DNA of 64,000 bases, taken from positions 124,001-188,000 of the IMG/VR virus record IMGVR_UViG_3300047321_000238, one strand, 5' to 3'. The first letter of the stretch is position 1. Each line of letters begins with the position of its first letter. Shown here one piece after another: positions 34,685-45,113 of this stretch. The notes under the pieces were generated by a model. That model was not told the origin of the DNA. It ran no database searches and worked only from the letters and a program-made list of their open reading frames with translations. The translations under genes were made by a program, and so were the position numbers.

Positions 34685-34709
34685 AAGAGCACGATATGTG
34701 CTCTTTTTT
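34685..34709 (+). terminator. Rho-independent terminator
   Basis: AAGAGCAC-5-GTGCTCTT plus T-tract. Confidence 0.75.
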
Positions 34710-34736: not shown

Positions 34737-35345
34737 TTGCTTAATAAATCTGAACTAAAGGAAAAATATAAAGATGAAAAAGTATTTGTACTTCCATCTA
34801 ATCTAGTTCAAAATATCGGTGATAAATTTACTAAGTTAAAACACGATCCTGCAATATGGAGAAAGTATGATAACTTAGGACTTTATATTCCACGATATGA
34901 TGCTGAATATAATTTAGCATTTCAACAAATCATTCCATACTTCTTAGTAACTAACAATGACGAATCAAAGTTCTATGTTGGTAAAAGAATTAAGGGTGAC
35001 TCTAGACTAGAAGGAATGTTATCGCTAGGATTTGGAGGACATATTAACGAATGTGATGGAACTAATGAAGCTGTATTTAAAGCTTTATATAGGGAAATGA
35101 ACGAAGAACTTAATATTGAACCAACATCTAGTTTCAAATTCATAGGAACTATGAGAGACTTACTATCTGACACTTCAGAACACTTTGGACTTATCTTTAT
35201 TATAAAATCAGAAGAGACTACCATCTCTATAAAAGAAACCGACACTTTAGAGGGCTTGTGGATGACAAAACAAGAAATGTTTGATTCCTATGGCAAATTC
35301 GAGAGCTGGGCTAAATACTTGTTAGATTACTTTTATGAGAACTAA
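34737..35345 (+). CDS. NUDIX-family hydrolase
   Basis: QQIIPY, SLGFGGHI...ALYREMNEEL Nudix box. Confidence 0.8.
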   Translation: MLNKSELKEKYKDEKVFVLPSNLVQNIGDKFTKLKHDPAIWRKYDNLGLYIPRYDAEYNLAFQQIIPYFLVTNNDESKFYVGKRIKGDSRLEGMLSLGFGGHINECDGTNEAVFKALYREMNEELNIEPTSSFKFIGTMRDLLSDTSEHFGLIFIIKSEETTISIKETDTLEGLWMTKQEMFDSYGKFESWAKYLLDYFYEN

Positions 35346-35444: not shown

Positions 35445-37664
35445 ATGCTAACGATAAGTAAAAGAGATGGTAGAGAACAAAAATTTGATTTATGGAAAGT
35501 TCAACATTCAATTAACCAAGCTGCATTTTCAATTAAGATGGAATTAAATACTATAGAATATGAAGAAGTCTTTAATAAATGCAAAGAATTAATTGGAGAA
35601 GATGGTGTTGTAGACGTAGAAAAACTACAAAATGCAATTGAAAAAGCATTGTATTTATGTGGTCACAGAAAAATAAGAGATTCTTATAAATCTTATAGAA
35701 AAGATCGTACACAAATTCGTGATACTAAATCAGATATCATGAAAGCCATTAATGCTATAGGTGTACAAACTGATAGAGATAATGCTAATGTTGGAAACAA
35801 CTTTAGTGCGAAGTTACTTAGAATAGCTTCTGAATCTAATAAGTGGACACAATTAGCTTTGATGCCTAAAGACCTAGCTAAAGAACATGAGAATTTAGAT
35901 TTATATTTTCATGACTTAGATAGTTATAACTTAACTCTTAATTGTCTTCATATACCTACAGGACAAATTCTTCAAAGAGGATTCAATACTGGATATGGAA
36001 CAATTAATAAGCCTAAGAGAATAGAAACAGCTGCAGATTTATCATGCATTCTTATGCAATCAACTCAAAATGATATGTTTGGTGGTCAATCACATCCAAA
36101 CTTTGATAATGATATGGCTCCATTTGTAGAATCTTCAAGACAAGAAATTGCTGAAGAACATTATTCTAGAATTGGTGAATTTGTTTCTGACGGATATTTT
36201 CATTATATCACTAAGAATAAAGAATCAATAGAAAAAGATATTGAAGTGAAAGTTGATAAATCAGTACATCAAGCTATGCAAGGAGTGGTTTATAATTTAA
36301 ATACCATGCATTGCCGTGCAGGTTCTCAAGTTCCATTTAGTTCAATTAATATAGGACTACCTGAATCTGAAGATGCAGCACTAGTATGCAAAGCGTTTTT
36401 AGAAGAATATGATAAAGGTCTAGGAAAAGGTGAACAACCTATATTCCCTAACATCATATTCAGAGTTAAATCAGGAGTTAATAGAGAGCCATCAGATCCA
36501 TATTACTACTTATTTAAGTTAGCTTGTAAAGTAGCTGCTAAAAGAATGAATCCTACATTTATGAATATAGATGCAGACTTCAATAAAGAGTATTATGATA
36601 AGGGATATATTCCTGCAACTATGGGATGCAGAACTGCATTAATGTCTAATGTTAATGGAGATCCTGGTGTTGAGGGTAGAGGTAACAATGCACCTACTAC
36701 TATTAATCTTCCTAGATTAGGTATTAGAGCAATGCTTTATGCAGATGAAGCAGTCAAAGAAGTAAACATGGTTGTTACAAGATATGATAATTACTATAAT
36801 AGTATTGTTGTTGCAAAGTTCTTTGAATTATTTGATGAAAAGATATCTTTATCTAGAGATTCATTAATGCATAGATACGGAGTACTGAAGAATCTAAGAG
36901 TTAAAGATTTACCATTCGTGGCAGGTCAAGGATTAATGAAAGGTTCTGAAGGGCTAGGACCAAATGATTCTATTGAACCAATACTTAAAAATGGTACTTG
37001 GGGAATAGGGTTTACAGGGCTTGCTGAAACATTAATAGCTATATGTGGTAAACATCATGGTGAAAGTGAATACGCAAGAGACTTAGGTGAGCAAATCATT
37101 ACTCATTTAAGAAATAGATGTGACGAATATAAAGAGATAGACAAAATGAATTGGAGTTGTTACGCAACACCTGCAGAAGGTCTTTCAGGCAAATTCGTTC
37201 CAGTGGATAGAAAAATATATGGAAATATTCCAGGTGTAACTGATAAAGATTACTATACAAATAGTTATCATGTTCCAGTTGATTGTATTATATCTATTAA
37301 AGATAAAATAGCAATCGAAGCACCATACCATAAACTTTGTAATGGAGGACATATTTCTTATATTGAAATGGATGATTATCCAGATGGAGACACTATTGAA
37401 AATATAATTAGATATGCTTACGAAAATACAAATATAAGTTATATGGGTATTAACTTTCATATAAGATATTGTAAAGACTGTGGAACTTATCTTCATGGAG
37501 AAAATGAATGTCCAAGTTGTGACAGTCATGAAATCCAAGGTATCTCTAGAGTTACAGGATATTTAAGTCTTGATGAGAGATTTGGTCCAGGAAAGTCTGC
37601 AGAAAGAGCAGCGAGAACTAATCATAATGGAAATCATAAAAATAATTATTATTTGGAGGAATAG
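35445..37664 (+). CDS. nrdD: Anaerobic ribonucleoside-triphosphate reductase (class III) with ATP cone
   Basis: ISKRDG ATP cone, QNDMFGGQS, ATMGCR, YATPAE, CxxC...CxxC, ISRVTGYL glycyl-radical motif. Confidence 0.95.
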   Translation: MLTISKRDGREQKFDLWKVQHSINQAAFSIKMELNTIEYEEVFNKCKELIGEDGVVDVEKLQNAIEKALYLCGHRKIRDSYKSYRKDRTQIRDTKSDIMKAINAIGVQTDRDNANVGNNFSAKLLRIASESNKWTQLALMPKDLAKEHENLDLYFHDLDSYNLTLNCLHIPTGQILQRGFNTGYGTINKPKRIETAADLSCILMQSTQNDMFGGQSHPNFDNDMAPFVESSRQEIAEEHYSRIGEFVSDGYFHYITKNKESIEKDIEVKVDKSVHQAMQGVVYNLNTMHCRAGSQVPFSSINIGLPESEDAALVCKAFLEEYDKGLGKGEQPIFPNIIFRVKSGVNREPSDPYYYLFKLACKVAAKRMNPTFMNIDADFNKEYYDKGYIPATMGCRTALMSNVNGDPGVEGRGNNAPTTINLPRLGIRAMLYADEAVKEVNMVVTRYDNYYNSIVVAKFFELFDEKISLSRDSLMHRYGVLKNLRVKDLPFVAGQGLMKGSEGLGPNDSIEPILKNGTWGIGFTGLAETLIAICGKHHGESEYARDLGEQIITHLRNRCDEYKEIDKMNWSCYATPAEGLSGKFVPVDRKIYGNIPGVTDKDYYTNSYHVPVDCIISIKDKIAIEAPYHKLCNGGHISYIEMDDYPDGDTIENIIRYAYENTNISYMGINFHIRYCKDCGTYLHGENECPSCDSHEIQGISRVTGYLSLDERFGPGKSAERAARTNHNGNHKNNYYLEE

Positions 37665-37666
37665 AT

Positions 37667-37870
37667 ATGGATTTTGAAAAAGGTATGACCTATGAAACAG
37701 AGGACAAAAAATTAGTAACCTGTTTTGAGTTAACAGAAACTTTTGCATTTTTATGTCCAATAGATTTAGATGGAAATTTAGATCTTACTAAAGTAGATGT
37801 ATATTCTACTAAAGAAGGAGTTACTCCAATAGAAACAGTTGAAGTTGCAGATAAAAATAAGGAATTATAA
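37667..37870 (+). CDS. Small acidic hypothetical protein
   Basis: SD GGAGGA. Confidence 0.65.
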
Positions 37871-37886
37871 AAGGGGGATTTTTATA

Positions 37887-38252
37887 ATGAAAGAATTAAG
37901 CACAATTCAAAAAAGAGAAAAATTAAACAAAGTATTAGCTATTGATGAAATAGGGCCAGGAGGAGCTAATCATGAATATTTGATAGTTTCAGATAGTGGA
38001 TTACAAGTACCTAAAGAAACAAAGATTCAACTTCAAAAAGGACCTAGAAAAGAAGCAGATTCTATCAATGGTGTAATTGATACTGACTTATTAGAAATAG
38101 TAAGAGATAGATTAAAAGCTTTCCAAGCTGGACCTTTTTCATCAAGAGAAAATGCATGTGCTTTAACTCATATAGAAGAAGCGTTAATGTGGATGAATAG
38201 AAGAGTTGAAGATAGAATTGAAAGAGATGTTTTGGGAAGGAATGAAAAATAA
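37887..38252 (+). CDS. tad1: Tad1-family Thoeris anti-defence sponge protein
   Basis: [77 protein letters not shown] closely match the C. botulinum prophage Tad1 as I recall it; SD AGGGGG before ATG 37887. Confidence 0.88.
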
Positions 38253-38716
38253 TGAATAAATATATGGGATTTAAATTATTAGAAGCTGAACCAATGACTC
38301 TTGGTGATTACAACAAGATGAAAGGATGGACGATTCCAGAAAATGAAGATCCATCGAAAGAAGGTTATGTTGTAAAATATTCAGATGATTATATTAGCTG
38401 GAGCCCTAAAGATGTATTTGAAGCATCTTATTTGCAAGTTAAAAATAATCCTAATCTTGCTAGTGGAGTTTCTGTTAGTCAAGAAATGGTTGATAACTTT
38501 ATTAAAGAAGTTTATGTACAAACAATTGGAACAAAAACAACTTTAGTTAGAGTTGAATTATCAAATGGATTTGAGATAGTAGAATCAAGTTCATGTGTAG
38601 ATGCAGCTAATTATAATGAAACTATGGGAAAAGAAATATGCTTAGAAAGAATAAAAAACAAAGTATGGGAATTGCTTGGTTTCTTATTACAAACAGCATA
38701 TAAAGGCATAAAGTAA
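38252..38716 (+). CDS. Two-domain phage protein: AEPM...SWSPK domain + N4 gp49/Sf6 gp66-like domain
   Basis: YMGFKLLEAEPM...EGYVVKY...SWSPKDVFEASY; LSNGF...SSCVD..NYN..MG.EIC...K.W..LGFLL. Confidence 0.65.
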   Translation: MNKYMGFKLLEAEPMTLGDYNKMKGWTIPENEDPSKEGYVVKYSDDYISWSPKDVFEASYLQVKNNPNLASGVSVSQEMVDNFIKEVYVQTIGTKTTLVRVELSNGFEIVESSSCVDAANYNETMGKEICLERIKNKVWELLGFLLQTAYKGIK

Positions 38717-39222: not shown

Positions 39223-39235
39223 GGAGGTGCATAGT

Positions 39236-39844
39236 ATGCATAAAACATTAGTATTTTTAAAAGGGTTTGCAGATGGCAAAGATTATGACATGTTACAGTT
39301 AGCTATAACTAAAGCAAGTATACTTCATAAAGACCAAAAGAGAAAGTTAGGAGAACCTTATATAGAACATCCTATGAGAGTTGCTAATAAACTTAAGATG
39401 TTGAAATTGCAAGATGAAAATTTATTAGCGGCAGCATTACTTCATGATGTGTTAGAAGATTGCGAAGTGACAGAAGCTGAATTAAAAGAATGCTTTAATA
39501 AAGAAATTGTTACAATCGTAAAGTTACTTTCTAAGGATAAGGTTATACCTACTGGATTATATTATACGTATATATTATCAGATCCTTTTGCTACTTTAAT
39601 TAAGATTGCTGATAGATGTCATAATGTAAGTACCATGGTAGAAGCATTTACTAAGACAAAAATAAAAGAGTATATAGAGGAAACTAATAATTATGTTATT
39701 CCTTTATGTAGAGAAGCCGTAAATTTATATCCTCAATACAATGATGAAATATATCTTATGAAAGATCATATAGAAAGTGTATGCTATGCTCTTGATATTT
39801 GCATCAAGGCTATTGATGAAATGGAGCATAAACATGGATTATAA
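39236..39844 (+). CDS. HD-domain hydrolase, RelA/SpoT-hydrolase (small alarmone hydrolase)-like
   Basis: HKDQKRK.GEPYIEHP, AAALLHDVLED, IKIADRCHN; SD AAGGAGG favours ATG 39236. Confidence 0.8.
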   Translation: MHKTLVFLKGFADGKDYDMLQLAITKASILHKDQKRKLGEPYIEHPMRVANKLKMLKLQDENLLAAALLHDVLEDCEVTEAELKECFNKEIVTIVKLLSKDKVIPTGLYYTYILSDPFATLIKIADRCHNVSTMVEAFTKTKIKEYIEETNNYVIPLCREAVNLYPQYNDEIYLMKDHIESVCYALDICIKAIDEMEHKHGL

Positions 39845-40550
39845 AACTAAACAATTTAAAGACTTACTAGATAAAAGTAAGAAAATAGTTTTTATGACTG
39901 GAGCAGGGGTTTCGACTCACTCTGGTATTCCTGACTATAGATCAGCTGGTGGTATTTATACTGATAATCCAGAGTATATGCTTAGTGAAGATTGTTGGAA
40001 AAATGAATATATTAAGTTCCTACAATTTGTAACTGAACATTTTGACATGTCTGGATATGAACCAAATGATATTCATAATTGGATTGCAGGACTTGAAAAA
40101 GATAAAGAGATTACTGTAGTTACTCAAAATATTGATGGGCTTCATCAAAGAAGTGGATCAACTAATGTTATCACTTATCATGGAGATATTAACAATTGGG
40201 AGTGCAAGGGATGTTTTACAAAATCTTCCTTTGCTGAGATCAAAAATGGAAATAATTATTGTTCGAGATGTGGCTGTAAATTAAGCCCTGAAGTTGTTCT
40301 ATATGGACAAGATATCTATTTTGATAAAGATGCATTAGCAAAAGGTAAAATAAAAGAAGCTGATCTTGTTATAGTAATAGGAACATCTCTTTCTGTATTT
40401 CCTTTTGCTGATTTGGTGCAAGAAGCAATGTTCACAAAATCAGTATTGTTAAATGCAACTGAAACTGCAAATTACTTTAACGCTTTTGATTTAGTATTCT
40501 TAGAGGATGCTATAGAAGTTATAAAGAGGGTGGAAGATATTGAGTCATAA
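39834..40550 (+). CDS. Sirtuin (CobB-like NAD-dependent deacylase)
   Basis: MTGAGVSTHSGIPDYRS, TQNIDGLH, YHG, C..C/C..C, IGTSL.VFP. Confidence 0.9.
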   Translation: MDYKTKQFKDLLDKSKKIVFMTGAGVSTHSGIPDYRSAGGIYTDNPEYMLSEDCWKNEYIKFLQFVTEHFDMSGYEPNDIHNWIAGLEKDKEITVVTQNIDGLHQRSGSTNVITYHGDINNWECKGCFTKSSFAEIKNGNNYCSRCGCKLSPEVVLYGQDIYFDKDALAKGKIKEADLVIVIGTSLSVFPFADLVQEAMFTKSVLLNATETANYFNAFDLVFLEDAIEVIKRVEDIES

Positions 40551-40917
40551 ACTATATACAACTTACTTAGCCAAAATGAAACAAATACCAGACACTTGTC
40601 AGATAGCTATTATAATGAGGTTCCCTCCGTTCTTGCCTAAGGATGGAGACATTATTCATTGTCCAGAGTTATCGCCAAAAGGAAAACTATTAAATGTATA
40701 TAAAGCTGATAAAGACTTTGATACTTTTAAAGATAACCTTTGGCAACAATGGGAAAGCAATGAAGAAGGAGCAATGGATACTCTTAAGTTAATAGAAGAT
40801 GCTCTTGAACATAATGATATTTGTTTAGTTTGTTGTGAAAAAAATGTAAATGAATGTCATAGATTATTCTTAGGAGGATACTTTAAATTTTTAGGATATG
40901 AATGGGAGGAATTATAA
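40540..40917 (+). CDS. DUF488-like protein
   Basis: ELSP..LL, ICLVCCE...CHR. Confidence 0.65.
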   Translation: MSHKLYTTYLAKMKQIPDTCQIAIIMRFPPFLPKDGDIIHCPELSPKGKLLNVYKADKDFDTFKDNLWQQWESNEEGAMDTLKLIEDALEHNDICLVCCEKNVNECHRLFLGGYFKFLGYEWEEL

Positions 40918-41257: not shown

Positions 41258-41836
41258 TTGCATCAATATAAAGGAGCTATTATAGCTCATATAGGACCTA
41301 TGTTTGGAGGAAAGACATCAGCATTAATTTCAGATGTTATTAAGTTCAAAATAGCTAAGTATAATACAGTGTTATTCAAACCTAAGAAAGATGAAAGATA
41401 TGCTAAAGATGCAGTAGTGAATCATCGAGGCGAAGAACTTGAAGCTATAAATGTAACAAGTATCTGTGATGTATTAAACTATATGAAAGAGAATCCAGAA
41501 GTAGACATTATAGCTATTGATGAATTTCAATTTCTTAAGGACAATCTATTAGGTAGTGAATATCTTGTTGGAAACTTAATTCACAATATCTTATTAGGTA
41601 ACAAGACTTTAATTATATCAGGATTGGATTTAGATAGTGATTTAATTCCATTTGATAATGTTAGAAATCTATTGCCATATTGTACTCATATAAATAAGCA
41701 TAAAGCTGTTTGTATGGTTTGTGGAGCAGATGCTACAACTAGTTATTGCAAAGTAGAAAAAGATGATCAAGAGTTAATCGGTGGTTCAGATCTTTACGAA
41801 CCTAGATGTTATCATTGTCATAGTTTAAAAGAATAA
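41258..41836 (+). CDS. tdk: Thymidine kinase
   Basis: GPMFGGKT, IAIDEFQF, SGLDLDSD, AVCMVC, IGGSDLYEPRC..C. Confidence 0.92.
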   Translation: MHQYKGAIIAHIGPMFGGKTSALISDVIKFKIAKYNTVLFKPKKDERYAKDAVVNHRGEELEAINVTSICDVLNYMKENPEVDIIAIDEFQFLKDNLLGSEYLVGNLIHNILLGNKTLIISGLDLDSDLIPFDNVRNLLPYCTHINKHKAVCMVCGADATTSYCKVEKDDQELIGGSDLYEPRCYHCHSLKE

Positions 41837-42787: not shown

Positions 42788-43060
42788 ATGTTTGAACTTA
42801 AAACTTTTTATGCTAATTTAACTAATAATCAAAAACTTGATATGATACAATTGTTTTATAATATGTATTACAATACAAATCAGGATGCAGCATTATATGG
42901 AGATGAATATTATTATTTAACTGCAGAAATACTGTTAGGAAGATTACCTATTAAGCTTCAATACTTAGCAGATAATTTTGTAGAAATACTATTAGATTTG
43001 TATCCAGACTTTAAACCATACTATAAACCATTTTTAGAAGAAGGTGAGACTTATCAATAA
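42788..43060 (+). CDS. Hypothetical protein
   Basis: SD GAGGGGG favours ATG 42788. Confidence 0.6.
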   Translation: MFELKTFYANLTNNQKLDMIQLFYNMYYNTNQDAALYGDEYYYLTAEILLGRLPIKLQYLADNFVEILLDLYPDFKPYYKPFLEEGETYQ

Positions 43061-45113
43061 AGAAGAATTAAAAGCTTTGTTAGCTTATTATGATGACTTA
43101 TATTATAATCAAGACATAAGTGAGATATCAGATTTTGAATACAATGTATTAAAAGAGAAGTACATTAAAAAGTATGGAGAATATGATTATATACCTGGAG
43201 AAGCATCTAAGGATAGTAAAAAATATACACATACAACTAATATATCTTCATTATCAAAATTACAAATAACTGATGAAGCAGGTATTAGAGAAAACCTTGA
43301 AAGATTATGGCCCGTTGTTATTCAAGAAAAGATGGATGGATTAACATTAGTTACTTATCCAAGCGGAGAAGATGTAACTCGTGGCAATGGTCACATAGGA
43401 GAAATAGTTACTGAAAATGTCAAGAAAGTAGATGGCATTGGAGATAAACTAGCTTATCCAGTTAGATCAGAAGTAGTTATGCTGCATTCTGAATTCAATA
43501 GAATAAATACAGAAAGAGTAGCAAGTGGATTAGAACCATTTGAAAACTGTAGAAATGCAGCTGCTGGAATGCTAAGACAAAAAGATTCTAATAAAGTTCA
43601 AGGTCTTAAAGCATTTGCATATAATATGATATTTGATGAAGAAGAAATTGACGAAGAAGATGCAGATGCAGAAAATCCAAACGCCAGAGCTCAAGTTCAA
43701 ATTGAATCATTAGAAATGCTTGGTTGGAATACAGTTGATTCTTATGAGCCAACAGATATAGATGATGCTATGGAATATATCATGAACTATGATAGATCTG
43801 TATTAGATTTTGATATTGATGGATTAGTTATAAAACATAATGGAAATAAAATATTTGGACAAACATCACATCACCCATTAAATGCAATAGCAATTAAGTT
43901 TGCACCAGAAGGTGGATGGACTACTTTAATAGATATTGAATGGTCTGTTGGTCGTACAGGCAAAGTTGTGCCTAAAGCTATATTTGAACCAATAAGTATA
44001 TTAGGTTCTACAGTTACTAAAGCTACCCTACACAATATTGGAATAGTAAATGCACTTGGATTAAATATGACTGAGAGCATTGGCAAGAATGGAGATTGTA
44101 TTACAAAGATATTTGTAATCAAAGCTAATGATGTTATACCAGCTATAATAGACGTAGAACACGCTCCACTTGATACTAAGAACTTATACTCTAAAAGTAT
44201 ATGGGAACCAACAACATGTCCAGATTGTGGCTCGGAACTTAGAAAAGAAAAGGACCAATTATATTGTAGCAATGAAAATTGTTCAAGTAGAGTATTAAAT
44301 AGATTAATACATTTATCTGAAAGAGATAGATTTAATATCGAAGATCTCGGAGAAGAAACAGCAATTAAATTAATAGCTAAATATAAGAACAAATTAGAAT
44401 TAATATTAACTCAAATTGAAAATAGTTATGAAGTAATGACTGAAGAAGATTATGATGAAGGAATCATAATTGAAGAGGCTATAGTTAAAGAAAAACTTGA
44501 GAAGTTACATCCAAGCTTTATATATGAATTAACTTTAGATGATATTAAATCATTAGAAGGTTTTGCTGAAAAATCAGCTACTAATTTATATAACGAGATT
44601 CAAAACTCTAAGAATATTGATTTTGATAAATTTTTAGCAGGATGTGGTATTCATTTAGTCGGAAGAAGAACATCTAAAGACATTGCTGAATTCTATTATA
44701 GTCCAAAAGACATGTCAGAAGTCGAAGCATTTGCATATGATTATGCCGATGGGTTTAAGAAGTTATCAACTTTAAAAGGAATAGGTAAAGAAACTATAGC
44801 TAGTTTAACTGAATATTATGGACCATATATAATTCCTTTTGGAGAATATGGATTAAATATTAAAGATGTTATTCCTAAAAAGAAAGCAACTAATCAAATG
44901 TCTATTGTAGTCACAGGAGCATTTGATAAATCTCGTGAAGAGATAAAAGCTATGATTGAAGATGCTGGCCATAAGATGGCTGGTTCAGTTAGTAAGAGCA
45001 CTGCTTATTTATTAGCGGCTCCAGGTGAAGAAAGCACTAGTAAGTATACAAAAGCTATAGAAGTTAATACTACAATAATTCATACATTGGAAGAGTTAGA
45101 AGAAATATTATGA
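43044..45113 (+). CDS. ligA: NAD-dependent DNA ligase
   Basis: EKMDG (KxDG), TRGNG, NCRNAAAG, DIDGLVIK, VGRTG, KATLHN, zinc finger, C-terminal BRCT. Confidence 0.94.
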   Translation: MRLINKEELKALLAYYDDLYYNQDISEISDFEYNVLKEKYIKKYGEYDYIPGEASKDSKKYTHTTNISSLSKLQITDEAGIRENLERLWPVVIQEKMDGLTLVTYPSGEDVTRGNGHIGEIVTENVKKVDGIGDKLAYPVRSEVVMLHSEFNRINTERVASGLEPFENCRNAAAGMLRQKDSNKVQGLKAFAYNMIFDEEEIDEEDADAENPNARAQVQIESLEMLGWNTVDSYEPTDIDDAMEYIMNYDRSVLDFDIDGLVIKHNGNKIFGQTSHHPLNAIAIKFAPEGGWTTLIDIEWSVGRTGKVVPKAIFEPISILGSTVTKATLHNIGIVNALGLNMTESIGKNGDCITKIFVIKANDVIPAIIDVEHAPLDTKNLYSKSIWEPTTCPDCGSELRKEKDQLYCSNENCSSRVLNRLIHLSERDRFNIEDLGEETAIKLIAKYKNKLELILTQIENSYEVMTEEDYDEGIIIEEAIVKEKLEKLHPSFIYELTLDDIKSLEGFAEKSATNLYNEIQNSKNIDFDKFLAGCGIHLVGRRTSKDIAEFYYSPKDMSEVEAFAYDYADGFKKLSTLKGIGKETIASLTEYYGPYIIPFGEYGLNIKDVIPKKKATNQMSIVVTGAFDKSREEIKAMIEDAGHKMAGSVSKSTAYLLAAPGEESTSKYTKAIEVNTTIIHTLEELEEIL

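What the first reader, a model, noticed from the sequence alone, without database searches (positions are those of the whole stretch)
37887..38252. Tad1 anti-Thoeris sponge embedded in the nrdD-nrdG operon
Seen: high motif identity with clostridial Tad1, placed between nrdD and nrdG with two other small genes. Known: Tad1 proteins sequester gcADPR and also cyclic di- and tri-nucleotides, blocking Thoeris and CBASS. Inference: counter-defence is co-expressed with dNTP synthesis, and the neighbours are good candidates for new anti-defence genes.
Basis: partly seen in the sequence, partly recalled or inferred. Interest (0 to 1): 0.65.

Follow-up and report, generated by a model that had tools for sequence, protein, structure and literature searches.

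The report
Tad1 plus Acb4 sponge pair in phage nrdDG operon
A 248-kb phage, probably of Clostridium, carries a close relative of the known Tad1 protein, which soaks up bacterial alarm nucleotides; it is joined to a second known sponge (Acb4 type) in the gap between two DNA-precursor genes, so this is a new member of known families in a new setting.

Summary
Window 37887-38252 (+) encodes a 121-aa protein that matches Clostridium botulinum prophage Tad1 (cbTad1, PDB 7UAV/8KBE-H) at E 2e-49, with 89 of 121 residues identical. All ten published ligand-contact residues are kept: the gcADPR/cyclic-dinucleotide pocket and the cyclic-trinucleotide site.

The downstream neighbour (38252-38716, 154 aa) belongs to a known family. 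It is an Acb4-family sponge (PF13876; fold match to SPO1 Acb4, 9E4W; predicted tetramer). Its N-terminal ~70-aa domain is homologous to the N-domain of RyR Tad gp68. That domain is also fused to Tad2, Sequestin and, marginally, a Tad1/Acb2-like hairpin.

The upstream orf67 (37667-37870) is a small acidic beta-protein found so far only in this phage lineage. Its function is unknown.

Tad1 and the Acb4-like gene recur next to each other, in either order, in Clostridium (pro)phages. In this jumbo-phage lineage the nrdD-nrdG gap is a variable hotspot; 64 of 65 other phage nrdDG loci have no insert of this size.

Gene spacing supports co-expression with dNTP genes, but no expression data could be obtained. 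Verdict: a new member of known kinds, of moderate interest.

The parts
37887..38252 (+). tad1: Tad1-family nucleotide sponge, 121 aa
   Evidence: PF24729 at 40 bits. cbTad1 structures matched at E 2e-49, 89/121 identical. Residues Q8, L13, R54, F79, N89, R106, R110 and L116 (gcADPR/CDN pocket) and R87, T94 (cyclic-trinucleotide site) correspond to cbTad1 Q8, L13, R57, F82, N92, R109, R113, L119, R90 and T97. It is the only PF24729 match in the 248-kb genome.
38252..38716 (+). Two-domain sponge gene, 154 aa: N-terminal RyR-Tad-type domain (about 38252-38467) plus Acb4 domain (about 38477-38698). Its start overlaps the tad1 stop by 1 nt (TAATG).
   Evidence: PF13876 E 6e-26, residues 76-149. AF2 model pLDDT 94. 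Foldseek gives 9E4W Acb4 at probability 1.0, target TM 0.62-0.70. VIA Z 7.9, followed by release factors, hibernation factors and dsRBDs, as the Acb4 paper reports. Tetramer model ipSAE 0.81 against a best control of 0.00. The N-domain matches gp68 of phage vB_PatP_CB1 at hhalign probability 96.7%, E 3e-10.
37667..37870 (+). orf67: small acidic protein (pI 4.2) with a GGAGG ribosome-binding site; function unknown
   Evidence: No Pfam or PHROG hit. Homologues at 64-73% identity occupy the same position in L159, L161 and L162. A more distant 89-aa homologue sits in the nrdD-nrdG gap of L246-L248. AF2 pLDDT 79, a five-strand beta structure; best VIA Z is 4.9, which is uninformative.
35445..37664 (+). 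nrdD: anaerobic ribonucleoside-triphosphate reductase, intact, with an ATP-cone
   Evidence: PF13597 E 2e-178; PF03477
38716..39222 (+). nrdG: activating radical-SAM enzyme; its start overlaps the stop of the preceding gene by 1 nt
   Evidence: PF13353 E 3e-32; phrog_626
34685..34705 (+). Terminator-like hairpin followed by a T-run; the only + strand terminator-like site between 33500 and 43500. It probably marks the upstream boundary of the transcription unit.
34737..35345 (+). NUDIX hydrolase gene, first gene of the tightly packed string
   Evidence: PF00293 E 4e-6; 72% identical and syntenic in the 245-kb relative
39227..39844 (+). RelA/SpoT-type HD hydrolase-only protein (resembles a small alarmone hydrolase). 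The true start is probably the ATG at 39236.
   Evidence: PF13328 E 4e-15; TIGR00691, N-terminal hydrolase part only
39840..40550 (+). SIR2-family NAD-dependent protein deacylase
   Evidence: PF02146 E 4e-39; NF001752 at 226 bits, above the cut-off of 221
40540..40917 (+). DUF488-N3a protein
   Evidence: PF22751 E 3e-9
41258..41836 (+). Thymidine kinase, the last gene of the string matched in the relative
   Evidence: NF003296 E 2e-43

Best explanation
The gene at 37887-38252 encodes a functional Tad1-family sponge. By homology to cbTad1 it should assemble as a hexamer (a trimer of dimers). That hexamer would hold six molecules of gcADPR, or of 2'3'/3'2'-cGAMP-type dinucleotides, in pockets at the dimer interfaces, and two cyclic trinucleotides (cA3, cAAG) at the threefold pockets. 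This would starve Thoeris and CBASS effectors of their activating signals. The gene is translationally coupled (TAATG overlap) to an Acb4-family sponge, predicted to be a tetramer, whose family binds 3'3'-cGAMP-type dinucleotides that cbTad1 binds only weakly. Together the two genes would form a cassette with a broader signal range. The cassette is inserted in the nrdD-nrdG gap of a jumbo-phage lineage and is most likely transcribed with the nucleotide-metabolism genes. Shown here: homology, conserved residues, fold, predicted oligomer, synteny. Inferred: ligand binding, the complementary ranges of the two sponges, co-transcription and the host.
For: Identity: phmmer gives E 2e-49 against cbTad1 structures, 89/121 identical, and PF24729 is above its cut-off. 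The ten residues shown by mutagenesis or structure to contact ligands in cbTad1 are all the same in the window protein. Residues 79-113 differ from cbTad1 at one position only (I96 for V).

Neighbour: PF13876 is the Acb4 family, with fold matches and a tetramer model at ipSAE 0.81 against a control of 0.00. SPO1 Acb4 residues K36, F48, E49 and N63 correspond to K95, F107, E108 and N122.

Ligand ranges: cbTad1 binds 3'3'-cGAMP with KD above 0.4 uM but 2'3'/3'2'-cGAMP, cA3 and cAAG at 12-31 nM. Acb4 binds 3'3'-cGAMP at about 157 nM.

Linkage: the two genes are adjacent in 10 of 80 close viral Tad1 loci, in both orders; in Clostridium phage vB_CpeS-1181; and in the closest bacterial copy, Clostridium weizhouense (Tad1 88%, Acb4-like 71%), with the same 1-nt overlap.

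Synteny: nrdD-[0 to 4 small ORFs]-Tad1-Acb4-like-nrdG is found in L084, L159, L161, L162, L246 and L247. In 64 of 65 other viral nrdD+nrdG loci there is no insert of this size.

Operon: gene gaps run from -16 to 99 nt from NUDIX to TK, and -1 to 16 nt within the nrdD-nrdG gap. No + strand terminator-like site lies between 34705 and 43500.
Against: No binding, oligomerisation or phage-rescue data exist for this protein; everything rests on homology. The host is unknown, so whether it carries Thoeris or CBASS is unknown. Only about 9-14% of close Tad1 loci carry the Acb4-like neighbour, so the pairing is recurrent but not obligatory. Two of the Acb4 phosphate-contact residues (SPO1 Y57, T70) differ here (V116, I129), so the neighbour's ligand may not be 3'3'-cGAMP.
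Confidence: 0.85

Rival explanations
1. The position between nrdD and nrdG has nothing to do with dNTP synthesis. The gap is simply a permissive hotspot in this phage lineage where accessory (anti-defence) genes accumulate, and they are expressed with whatever transcript passes through.
For: The gap content varies among relatives: Tad1 + Acb4-like only (L084); orf66-73 + both (window, L159, L161, L162); four extra small ORFs + both (L246, L247). In temperate Clostridium phages the same pair sits in other contexts, for example among head genes of vB_CpeS-1181. An analogous anti-signalling hotspot is described in N4-like phages.
Against: The pair has stayed in this exact gap while the proteins diverged to 50-72% identity, with overlapping stop and start codons joining it to nrdG. 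Early or middle timing together with DNA-metabolism genes would suit a sponge. The two readings do not exclude each other.
Confidence: 0.5
2. In its real host the protein works mainly as an anti-CBASS sponge (cyclic tri- and dinucleotides), and the 'anti-Thoeris' label is secondary.
For: The reported affinities of cbTad1/CmTad1 for cA3, cAAG and 2'3'/3'2'-cGAMP (10-31 nM) are more than ten times tighter than the 241 nM reported for CmTad1 with 1''-2' gcADPR. Clostridium genomes encode CdnD and CdnG CBASS enzymes. The cyclic-trinucleotide residues R87 and T94 are kept here, although they are lost in the jumbo relative L084 and in vB_CpeS-1181.
Against: The gcADPR pocket residues are invariant in all 13 aligned relatives. 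The cyclic-trinucleotide site is dispensable in some relatives, so the shared pocket looks like the core function. The host's defence repertoire is unknown.
Confidence: 0.35
3. The protein is an Acb2 rather than a Tad1, since PF24729 covers both.
For: The Pfam hit is to the shared Acb2/Tad1 hairpin domain only.
Against: The full-length match at E 2e-49 is to Tad1 structures. No chain named Acb2 appears among the PDB matches, even at E up to 10. The N-terminal beta-sheet half also aligns with cbTad1.
Confidence: 0.02
4. The sponge buffers ordinary nucleotides or RNR effectors and serves the nrd operon rather than counter-defence.
For: Only its position next to an ATP-cone-bearing NrdD.
Against: The same protein family occurs mostly away from nrd genes. 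64 of 65 phage nrdDG loci lack it. Its pocket residues are those that bind immune signals.
Confidence: 0.03

Closest known systems
cbTad1 (Clostridium botulinum prophage Thoeris anti-defence 1; PDB 7UAV, 7UAW, 8SMD, 8KBE-8KBH)
   Same: Full-length alignment with 89/121 identical. All published gcADPR/CDN pocket and cyclic-trinucleotide-site residues are the same. The helical hairpin (residues 79-113) differs at one position.
   Different: A 3-residue shorter and divergent loop region (residues 33-48). It is encoded by a 248-kb phage with terminal repeats rather than a prophage. It lies inside an nrdDG operon and is coupled to an Acb4-like gene. No experiment has been done on it.
SPO1 Acb4 (PDB 9E4W) and the PF13876 family
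   Same: The downstream 154-aa protein has the PF13876 domain, the same fold (Z 7.9, rmsd 2.8 A over 75 residues), the same list of structural neighbours, a predicted tetramer, and conserved guanine-pocket residues (K, F, E).
   Different: Only about 22% identity. It has an extra ~70-aa N-terminal domain. Two phosphate-contact residues differ (V116, I129). Its ligand is untested.
RyR Tad gp68 of Pectobacterium phage vB_PatP_CB1 (preprint 10.64898/2026.06.04.730250)
   Same: Its N-terminal domain (residues 3-69) is homologous to the N-domain of the 154-aa protein (hhalign 96.7%, E 3e-10). In the gp68 crystal structure it dimerises by swapping strand beta1. In the tetramer model here, residues 1-13 also contact another copy.
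   Different: The C-terminal sponge domain is RyR-repeat-like there and Acb4 here.
Anti-signalling hotspot of N4-like phages (Ab09 gp57-61; same preprint)
   Same: A fixed gap between conserved replication or nucleotide genes that collects sponge genes (Acb4, Sequestin, Tad2) plus small genes of unknown function.
   Different: A different phage group, different flanking genes (primase and virion RNA polymerase there, nrdD/nrdG here), and Tad1 as the constant member here.

Membership tests
Tad1 (Thoeris anti-defence 1) | Acb2/Tad1 hairpin domain (PF24729) above the curated cut-off | tested here: met
   40 bits against a cut-off of 27, residues 42-107; also found in the genome search
Tad1 (Thoeris anti-defence 1) | Full-length similarity to an experimentally characterised Tad1, including the N-terminal beta-sheet | tested here: met
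   cbTad1 E 2e-49 over residues 1-121; CmTad1 E 6e-14; SBSphiJ7 Tad1 42% by tblastn
Tad1 (Thoeris anti-defence 1) | gcADPR / cyclic-dinucleotide pocket residues (cbTad1 F82, N92, R109, R113; also Q8, L13, R57, L119) | tested here: met
   F79, N89, R106, R110, Q8, L13, R54 and L116 are present, and invariant in 13 relatives
Tad1 (Thoeris anti-defence 1) | Cyclic-trinucleotide site and hexamer-interface residues (cbTad1 R90, T97) | tested here: met
   R87 and T94 are present. They are replaced in the relatives L084 and vB_CpeS-1181.
Tad1 (Thoeris anti-defence 1) | Hexameric assembly (trimer of dimers) | not tested
   No oligomer model was run for Tad1. The interface helices differ from cbTad1 at one residue only.
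Tad1 (Thoeris anti-defence 1) | Binds and releases intact gcADPR / cA3 / cGAMP, and rescues phage from Thoeris or CBASS | not testable with these tools
   Requires biochemistry and plaque assays
Acb4 (PF13876), for the 154-aa neighbour | PF13876 domain above the cut-off | tested here: met
   91 bits against a cut-off of 27, residues 76-149. The Acb4 paper equates the family with PF13876.
Acb4 (PF13876), for the 154-aa neighbour | Acb4 fold (three-strand sheet flanked by helices, dsRBD-like) | tested here: met
   Foldseek probability 1.0 to 9E4W; VIA Z 7.9, top of 48,161 chains
Acb4 (PF13876), for the 154-aa neighbour | Homotetramer built from a beta-sandwich interface and a helix 'joint' interface | tested here: met
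   Prediction only: ipSAE 0.81, best control 0.00, runs agree in at least 90% of contacts, partner pLDDT 86. The tool states that its mark was reached by 20 of 30 proteins solved as pairs of one chain and 1 of 23 solved as single chains, and that these counts hold only roughly here. Contacts lie in strands 88-114 and helix 141-154. The score may partly reflect the model's memory of 9E4W.
Acb4 (PF13876), for the 154-aa neighbour | 3'3'-cGAMP contact residues of SPO1 Acb4 | tested here: inconclusive
   K36, F48, E49 and N63 are kept (K95, F107, E108, N122). V56, F62 and I66 are conservatively replaced (C115, Y121, M125). Y57 and T70 are replaced (V116, I129). K81 lies outside the alignment.
Tad2 (PF11195), considered for the N-domain of the neighbour | Sequence or profile similarity to Tad2 | tested here: not met
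   No Pfam hit at E up to 10. hhalign against SPO1 Tad2 gives probability 0.2%. No Tad2 chain was found in the PDB profile search. The order of secondary-structure elements appears to differ, judged from the AF2 model against my reading of the Tad2 sequence.
Acb2 | Sequence similarity to Acb2 structures beyond the shared hairpin | tested here: not met
   No chain named Acb2 among the PDB matches at E up to 10

The most novel reading that the evidence does not exclude
The nrdD-nrdG gap of this jumbo-phage lineage is an anti-signalling island. On that reading its unexplained residents are new inhibitors of nucleotide-based immunity: orf67 and its 89-aa relative, plus orf98, orf163 and orf60/72 of L246-L248. 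Separately, the highly conserved ~65-aa N-domain has 25 invariant residues across 11 proteins, including fusions to Acb4, Tad2, Sequestin and a Tad1/Acb2-like hairpin, and it is also homologous to the RyR Tad N-domain. It may therefore be more than a dimeriser. It could be a shared module that binds a further ligand or a host factor common to all these sponges.
Probability: 0.25. Interest if true: 0.6.

Novelty: new member of a known kind. Interest (0 to 1): 0.4.

Why it matters
This adds a well-supported Tad1 to a large phage with terminal repeats, probably of Clostridium. It shows that Tad1 travels with an Acb4-type sponge as a two-gene, translationally coupled cassette. The published ligand ranges of the two families complement each other: gcADPR, cyclic trinucleotides and 2'-5'-linked cGAMPs for Tad1, and 3'3' dinucleotides for Acb4.

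It also marks a lineage-specific hotspot whose small unknown genes are cheap to test. Finally, it documents that one unnamed N-terminal domain is joined to three sponge families above the Pfam cut-offs, to RyR Tad by homology, and marginally to a Tad1/Acb2-like hairpin. A Pfam-based fusion screen could not see this, because the domain has no Pfam model.

Tried and rejected

2. N-domain as a divergent Tad2: rejected.

3. orf67: no hit in Pfam, PHROGs, tblastn against phages, or the IMG/VR pattern scan. The word search found one relative. The exhaustive profile search found 16 matches, mostly small proteins. The Atlas and VIA searches gave only generic small beta-barrel matches with Z below 5. 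Its function remains open.

4. The sigma-70 promoter scan was uninformative: 51 sites against 61 expected from shuffles.

5. No second Tad1 or Acb4 copy and no Tad2 in the 248-kb genome. No tRNA in the window.

6. PF11195 was absent from five bacterial genomes that carry close Tad1 copies.

7. One Pfam call failed on a mis-framed reference and was repeated without it.

Its fold matches (Mfd RID, CarD, Tudor, DUF1653; Z 4.2-5.3) come from the whole-protein model and are weak.

Full report
Setting. The window is bases 124001-188000 of a 247,883-bp IMG/VR virus record with direct terminal repeats, so it comes from a jumbo phage. GC content is about 30% and almost all genes are on the + strand. 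The window holds the replication and nucleotide-metabolism module: topoisomerase II subunits, helicases, an NAD-dependent DNA ligase, a DNA polymerase and an endolysin. It contains no tRNA genes.

The observation. The ORF at 37887-38252 (+) starts at an ATG preceded by a GGGGG ribosome-binding site and encodes 121 aa.
- It matches Pfam PF24729 (Acb2/Tad1 hairpin) at 40 bits against a cut-off of 27.
- It matches phrog_2428 end to end.
- phmmer against all PDB chains returns cbTad1 (7UAV, 8KBE, 8KBG, 8KBH) at E 2e-49 over the whole length. I counted 89 identical residues of 121, with one 3-residue gap. CmTad1 follows at E 6e-14.
- No chain named Acb2 appears even at E up to 10.

Functional residues. 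Preprint 10.1101/2023.11.15.567273 defines the following for cbTad1:
- the shared gcADPR / 2'3'-cGAMP pocket: F82, N92, R109 and R113, plus Q8, L13, R57 and L119;
- the cyclic-trinucleotide site, which is also part of the hexamer interface: R90 and T97.

After the gap, window numbering is cbTad1 numbering minus 3. All ten residues are identical here: F79, N89, R106, R110, Q8, L13, R54, L116, R87 and T94. In an alignment of 13 relatives the pocket residues are invariant. R87 and T94 are kept in the window and its nearest relatives, but are replaced in the 245-kb relative L084 (D, V) and in Clostridium phage vB_CpeS-1181 (E, E). Residues 79-113, the hairpin that forms both sites, differ from cbTad1 only at I96.

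Membership in the Tad1 family is therefore met on every sequence criterion. Hexamer formation and ligand binding were not tested.

Downstream neighbour (38252-38716, 154 aa). Its start overlaps the tad1 stop by one base (TAATG), and its stop overlaps the nrdG start in the same way.
- Residues 76-149 match PF13876 at E 6e-26.
- The Acb4 paper (10.1101/2024.12.30.630793) equates PF13876 with the Acb4 sponge family.
- phmmer finds SPO1 Acb4 (9E4W) at E 0.002.
- An AlphaFold2 model has pLDDT 94.4. Foldseek matches it to 9E4W with probability 1.0 and target TM 0.62-0.70.
- VIA-align ranks 9E4W first among 48,161 chains (Z 7.9, 75 residues, rmsd 2.8 A). Release factors, ribosome hibernation factors and dsRBDs follow, which is the same neighbour list the Acb4 authors report.
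- A four-copy model scored ipSAE 0.81 against a best control of 0.00. The runs agreed in at least 90% of contacts and the partner pLDDT was 86. The tool states that its mark was reached by 20 of 30 proteins solved as pairs of one chain and 1 of 23 solved as single chains, and that these counts hold only roughly here. Contacts lie in the beta-strands (88-114) and the C-terminal helix (141-154), as in the two Acb4 interfaces. This supports a tetramer but does not show one, and it may reflect the model's memory of 9E4W.
- Of the SPO1 ligand contacts, K36, F48, E49 and N63 are kept. V56, F62 and I66 are conservatively changed. Y57 and T70 are changed. The ligand specificity is therefore open.

The N-terminal domain of the neighbour. 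Residues 1-72 have no Pfam model.
- A region-restricted search returned 168 proteins. Among the 120 listed, the domain is N-terminally fused to PF13876/Acb4 (49), PF11195/Tad2 (41), PF21825 (24), both PF11195 and PF21825 (1), or a Tad1/Acb2-like hairpin (1; 19 bits on rescanning, below the 27-bit cut-off). In 4 proteins it stands alone or with no recognisable partner. The counts are mine, from the listing. Searches confirm the domain order, and 25 residues are invariant across 11 of these proteins.
- PF21825 is the 'Sequestin' 3'cADPR sponge family (preprint 10.1101/2025.07.12.664507). That study looked for fusion partners only among Pfam families, so it could not see this domain.
- The domain is not Tad2: hhalign against SPO1 Tad2 gives probability 0.2%.
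- It is homologous to the N-terminal domain of RyR Tad gp68 of Pectobacterium phage vB_PatP_CB1: tblastn E 2e-5; gene CB1_68, 183 aa; hhalign probability 96.7%, E 3e-10.
[quoted passage not shown] It dimerises by swapping strand beta1 and had no anti-Thoeris activity on its own. In my tetramer model, residues 1-13 likewise contact another copy.
- The domain occurs in 168 cultured phage records, including N4-like, crAss-like and Vibrio phages.

Upstream neighbour orf67 (37667-37870). It has a GGAGG ribosome-binding site, a pI of 4.2 and two invariant cysteines.
- It has no family hit.
- Homologues at 64-73% identity sit in the same position in L159, L161 and L162.
- An exhaustive profile search found 16 matches, mostly small proteins. 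Of the three looked up, one (89 aa) lies in the nrdD-nrdG gap of L246-L248. The other two lie on contigs under 1 kb that show no context.
- The model (pLDDT 79) is a five-strand beta structure with only generic matches, Z at most 4.9.
- Its function is unknown. It is a candidate only by position.

Synteny and origin.
- The 245-kb relative IMGVR_UViG_3300045988_175595 has HU-NUDIX-nrdD-Tad1-Acb4-like-nrdG-HD-SIR2-DUF488-TK at 47-72% protein identity, without orf67.
- L159, L161 and L162 carry nrdD-orf-Tad1-Acb4-like-nrdG-HD.
- L246 and L247 carry four small ORFs ahead of Tad1-Acb4-like-nrdG. L246 and L248 show an intein-bearing nrdD upstream, while L247 is cut before nrdD and L248 ends before Tad1.
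- In 64 of 65 other viral loci holding both genes, nrdD and nrdG abut or lie within about 340 nt by tblastn coordinates, with no insert of this size.
- The gap is therefore a lineage-specific, variable hotspot in which the Tad1 + Acb4-like pair is the constant part.
- Outside the lineage, the pair is adjacent in 10 of 80 close viral Tad1 loci in both orders and in vB_CpeS-1181 among head genes.
- It is also adjacent in the closest bacterial copy, Clostridium weizhouense (Tad1 88%, Acb4-like 71%), with the same 1-nt overlap. This suggests transfer as a unit and a Clostridium host, which is an inference.
- Two gut MAG loci place an N-domain + Sequestin fusion next to Tad1.

Mechanism. Shown here: family membership, conserved ligand residues, fold, predicted oligomer of the neighbour, and conserved linkage. 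Inferred from published data on relatives:
- Tad1 hexamers sequester gcADPR, 2'3'/3'2'-cGAMP and cyclic trinucleotides, but bind 3'3'-cGAMP poorly.
- Acb4 binds 3'3'-cGAMP and cUA.
- The pair would therefore cover more signals than either protein alone, which would explain why the two genes travel together.

Co-expression with nrdDG and the flanking NUDIX, HD, SIR2, DUF488 and TK genes is inferred from gene gaps of -16 to 99 nt and from a single + strand terminator-like site at 34685-34705. It could not be checked against RNA data.

Comparison and verdict. This is a new member of the Tad1 family next to a new member of the Acb4 family. The context is new (a jumbo-phage nrdDG operon), but hotspots of this type are already described for N4-like phages. 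The leads most worth following are the unknown small genes in the hotspot and the N-domain shared by several sponge families.

Noticed in passing
window 34737-35345, 39227-40917: The nrd genes sit in one tightly packed string with a NUDIX hydrolase, a RelA/SpoT-type HD hydrolase-only protein (resembling a small alarmone hydrolase), a SIR2 NAD-dependent deacylase (NF001752, above its cut-off) and a DUF488-N3a protein. All of these are conserved in the 245-kb relative. Several act on NAD- or alarmone-type nucleotides and could bear on host signalling or defence.
   Followed up: partly
window 43044-45113: An NAD-dependent DNA ligase. A phage that needs NAD+ for ligation would be especially exposed to NAD-depleting Thoeris or SIR2 effectors. 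This link is only an idea.
   Followed up: no
L084:4119-4490 and L001:5472-5840: The Tad1 copies of the 245-kb relative and of Clostridium phage vB_CpeS-1181 have lost the cyclic-trinucleotide-site residues (R to D/E, T to V/E) while keeping the gcADPR/CDN pocket.
   Followed up: partly
L246:17-2131, L248:1-3188: In some relatives nrdD carries an intein with a LAGLIDADG endonuclease (weak Pfam hits). The window's nrdD has none.
   Followed up: no
protein P0199 (185 aa) and P0218 (254 aa): P0199 joins the N-domain to a Tad1/Acb2-like hairpin (19 bits, below the cut-off). P0218 joins the N-domain, Sequestin and Tad2 in one chain.
   Followed up: partly
L183:3794-4255, L184:2919-3380: In Lachnospiraceae and Ruminococcus MAG loci, a 154-aa N-domain + PF21825 (Sequestin) protein lies beside Tad1. 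This is a different sponge pairing built on the same plan.
   Followed up: partly
window 39227-39236: The GTG start listed for the HD gene directly abuts the GGAGG motif. The ATG at 39236 is the more likely start.
   Followed up: no
PDB 8y6v chain I (gp184): A 230-aa chain named gp184 matches the Tad1 hairpin (residues 47-115) at E 2e-5. The same region of the window protein also hits phrog_22140, a 230-position profile. This may be a larger protein family that carries the hairpin.
   Followed up: no
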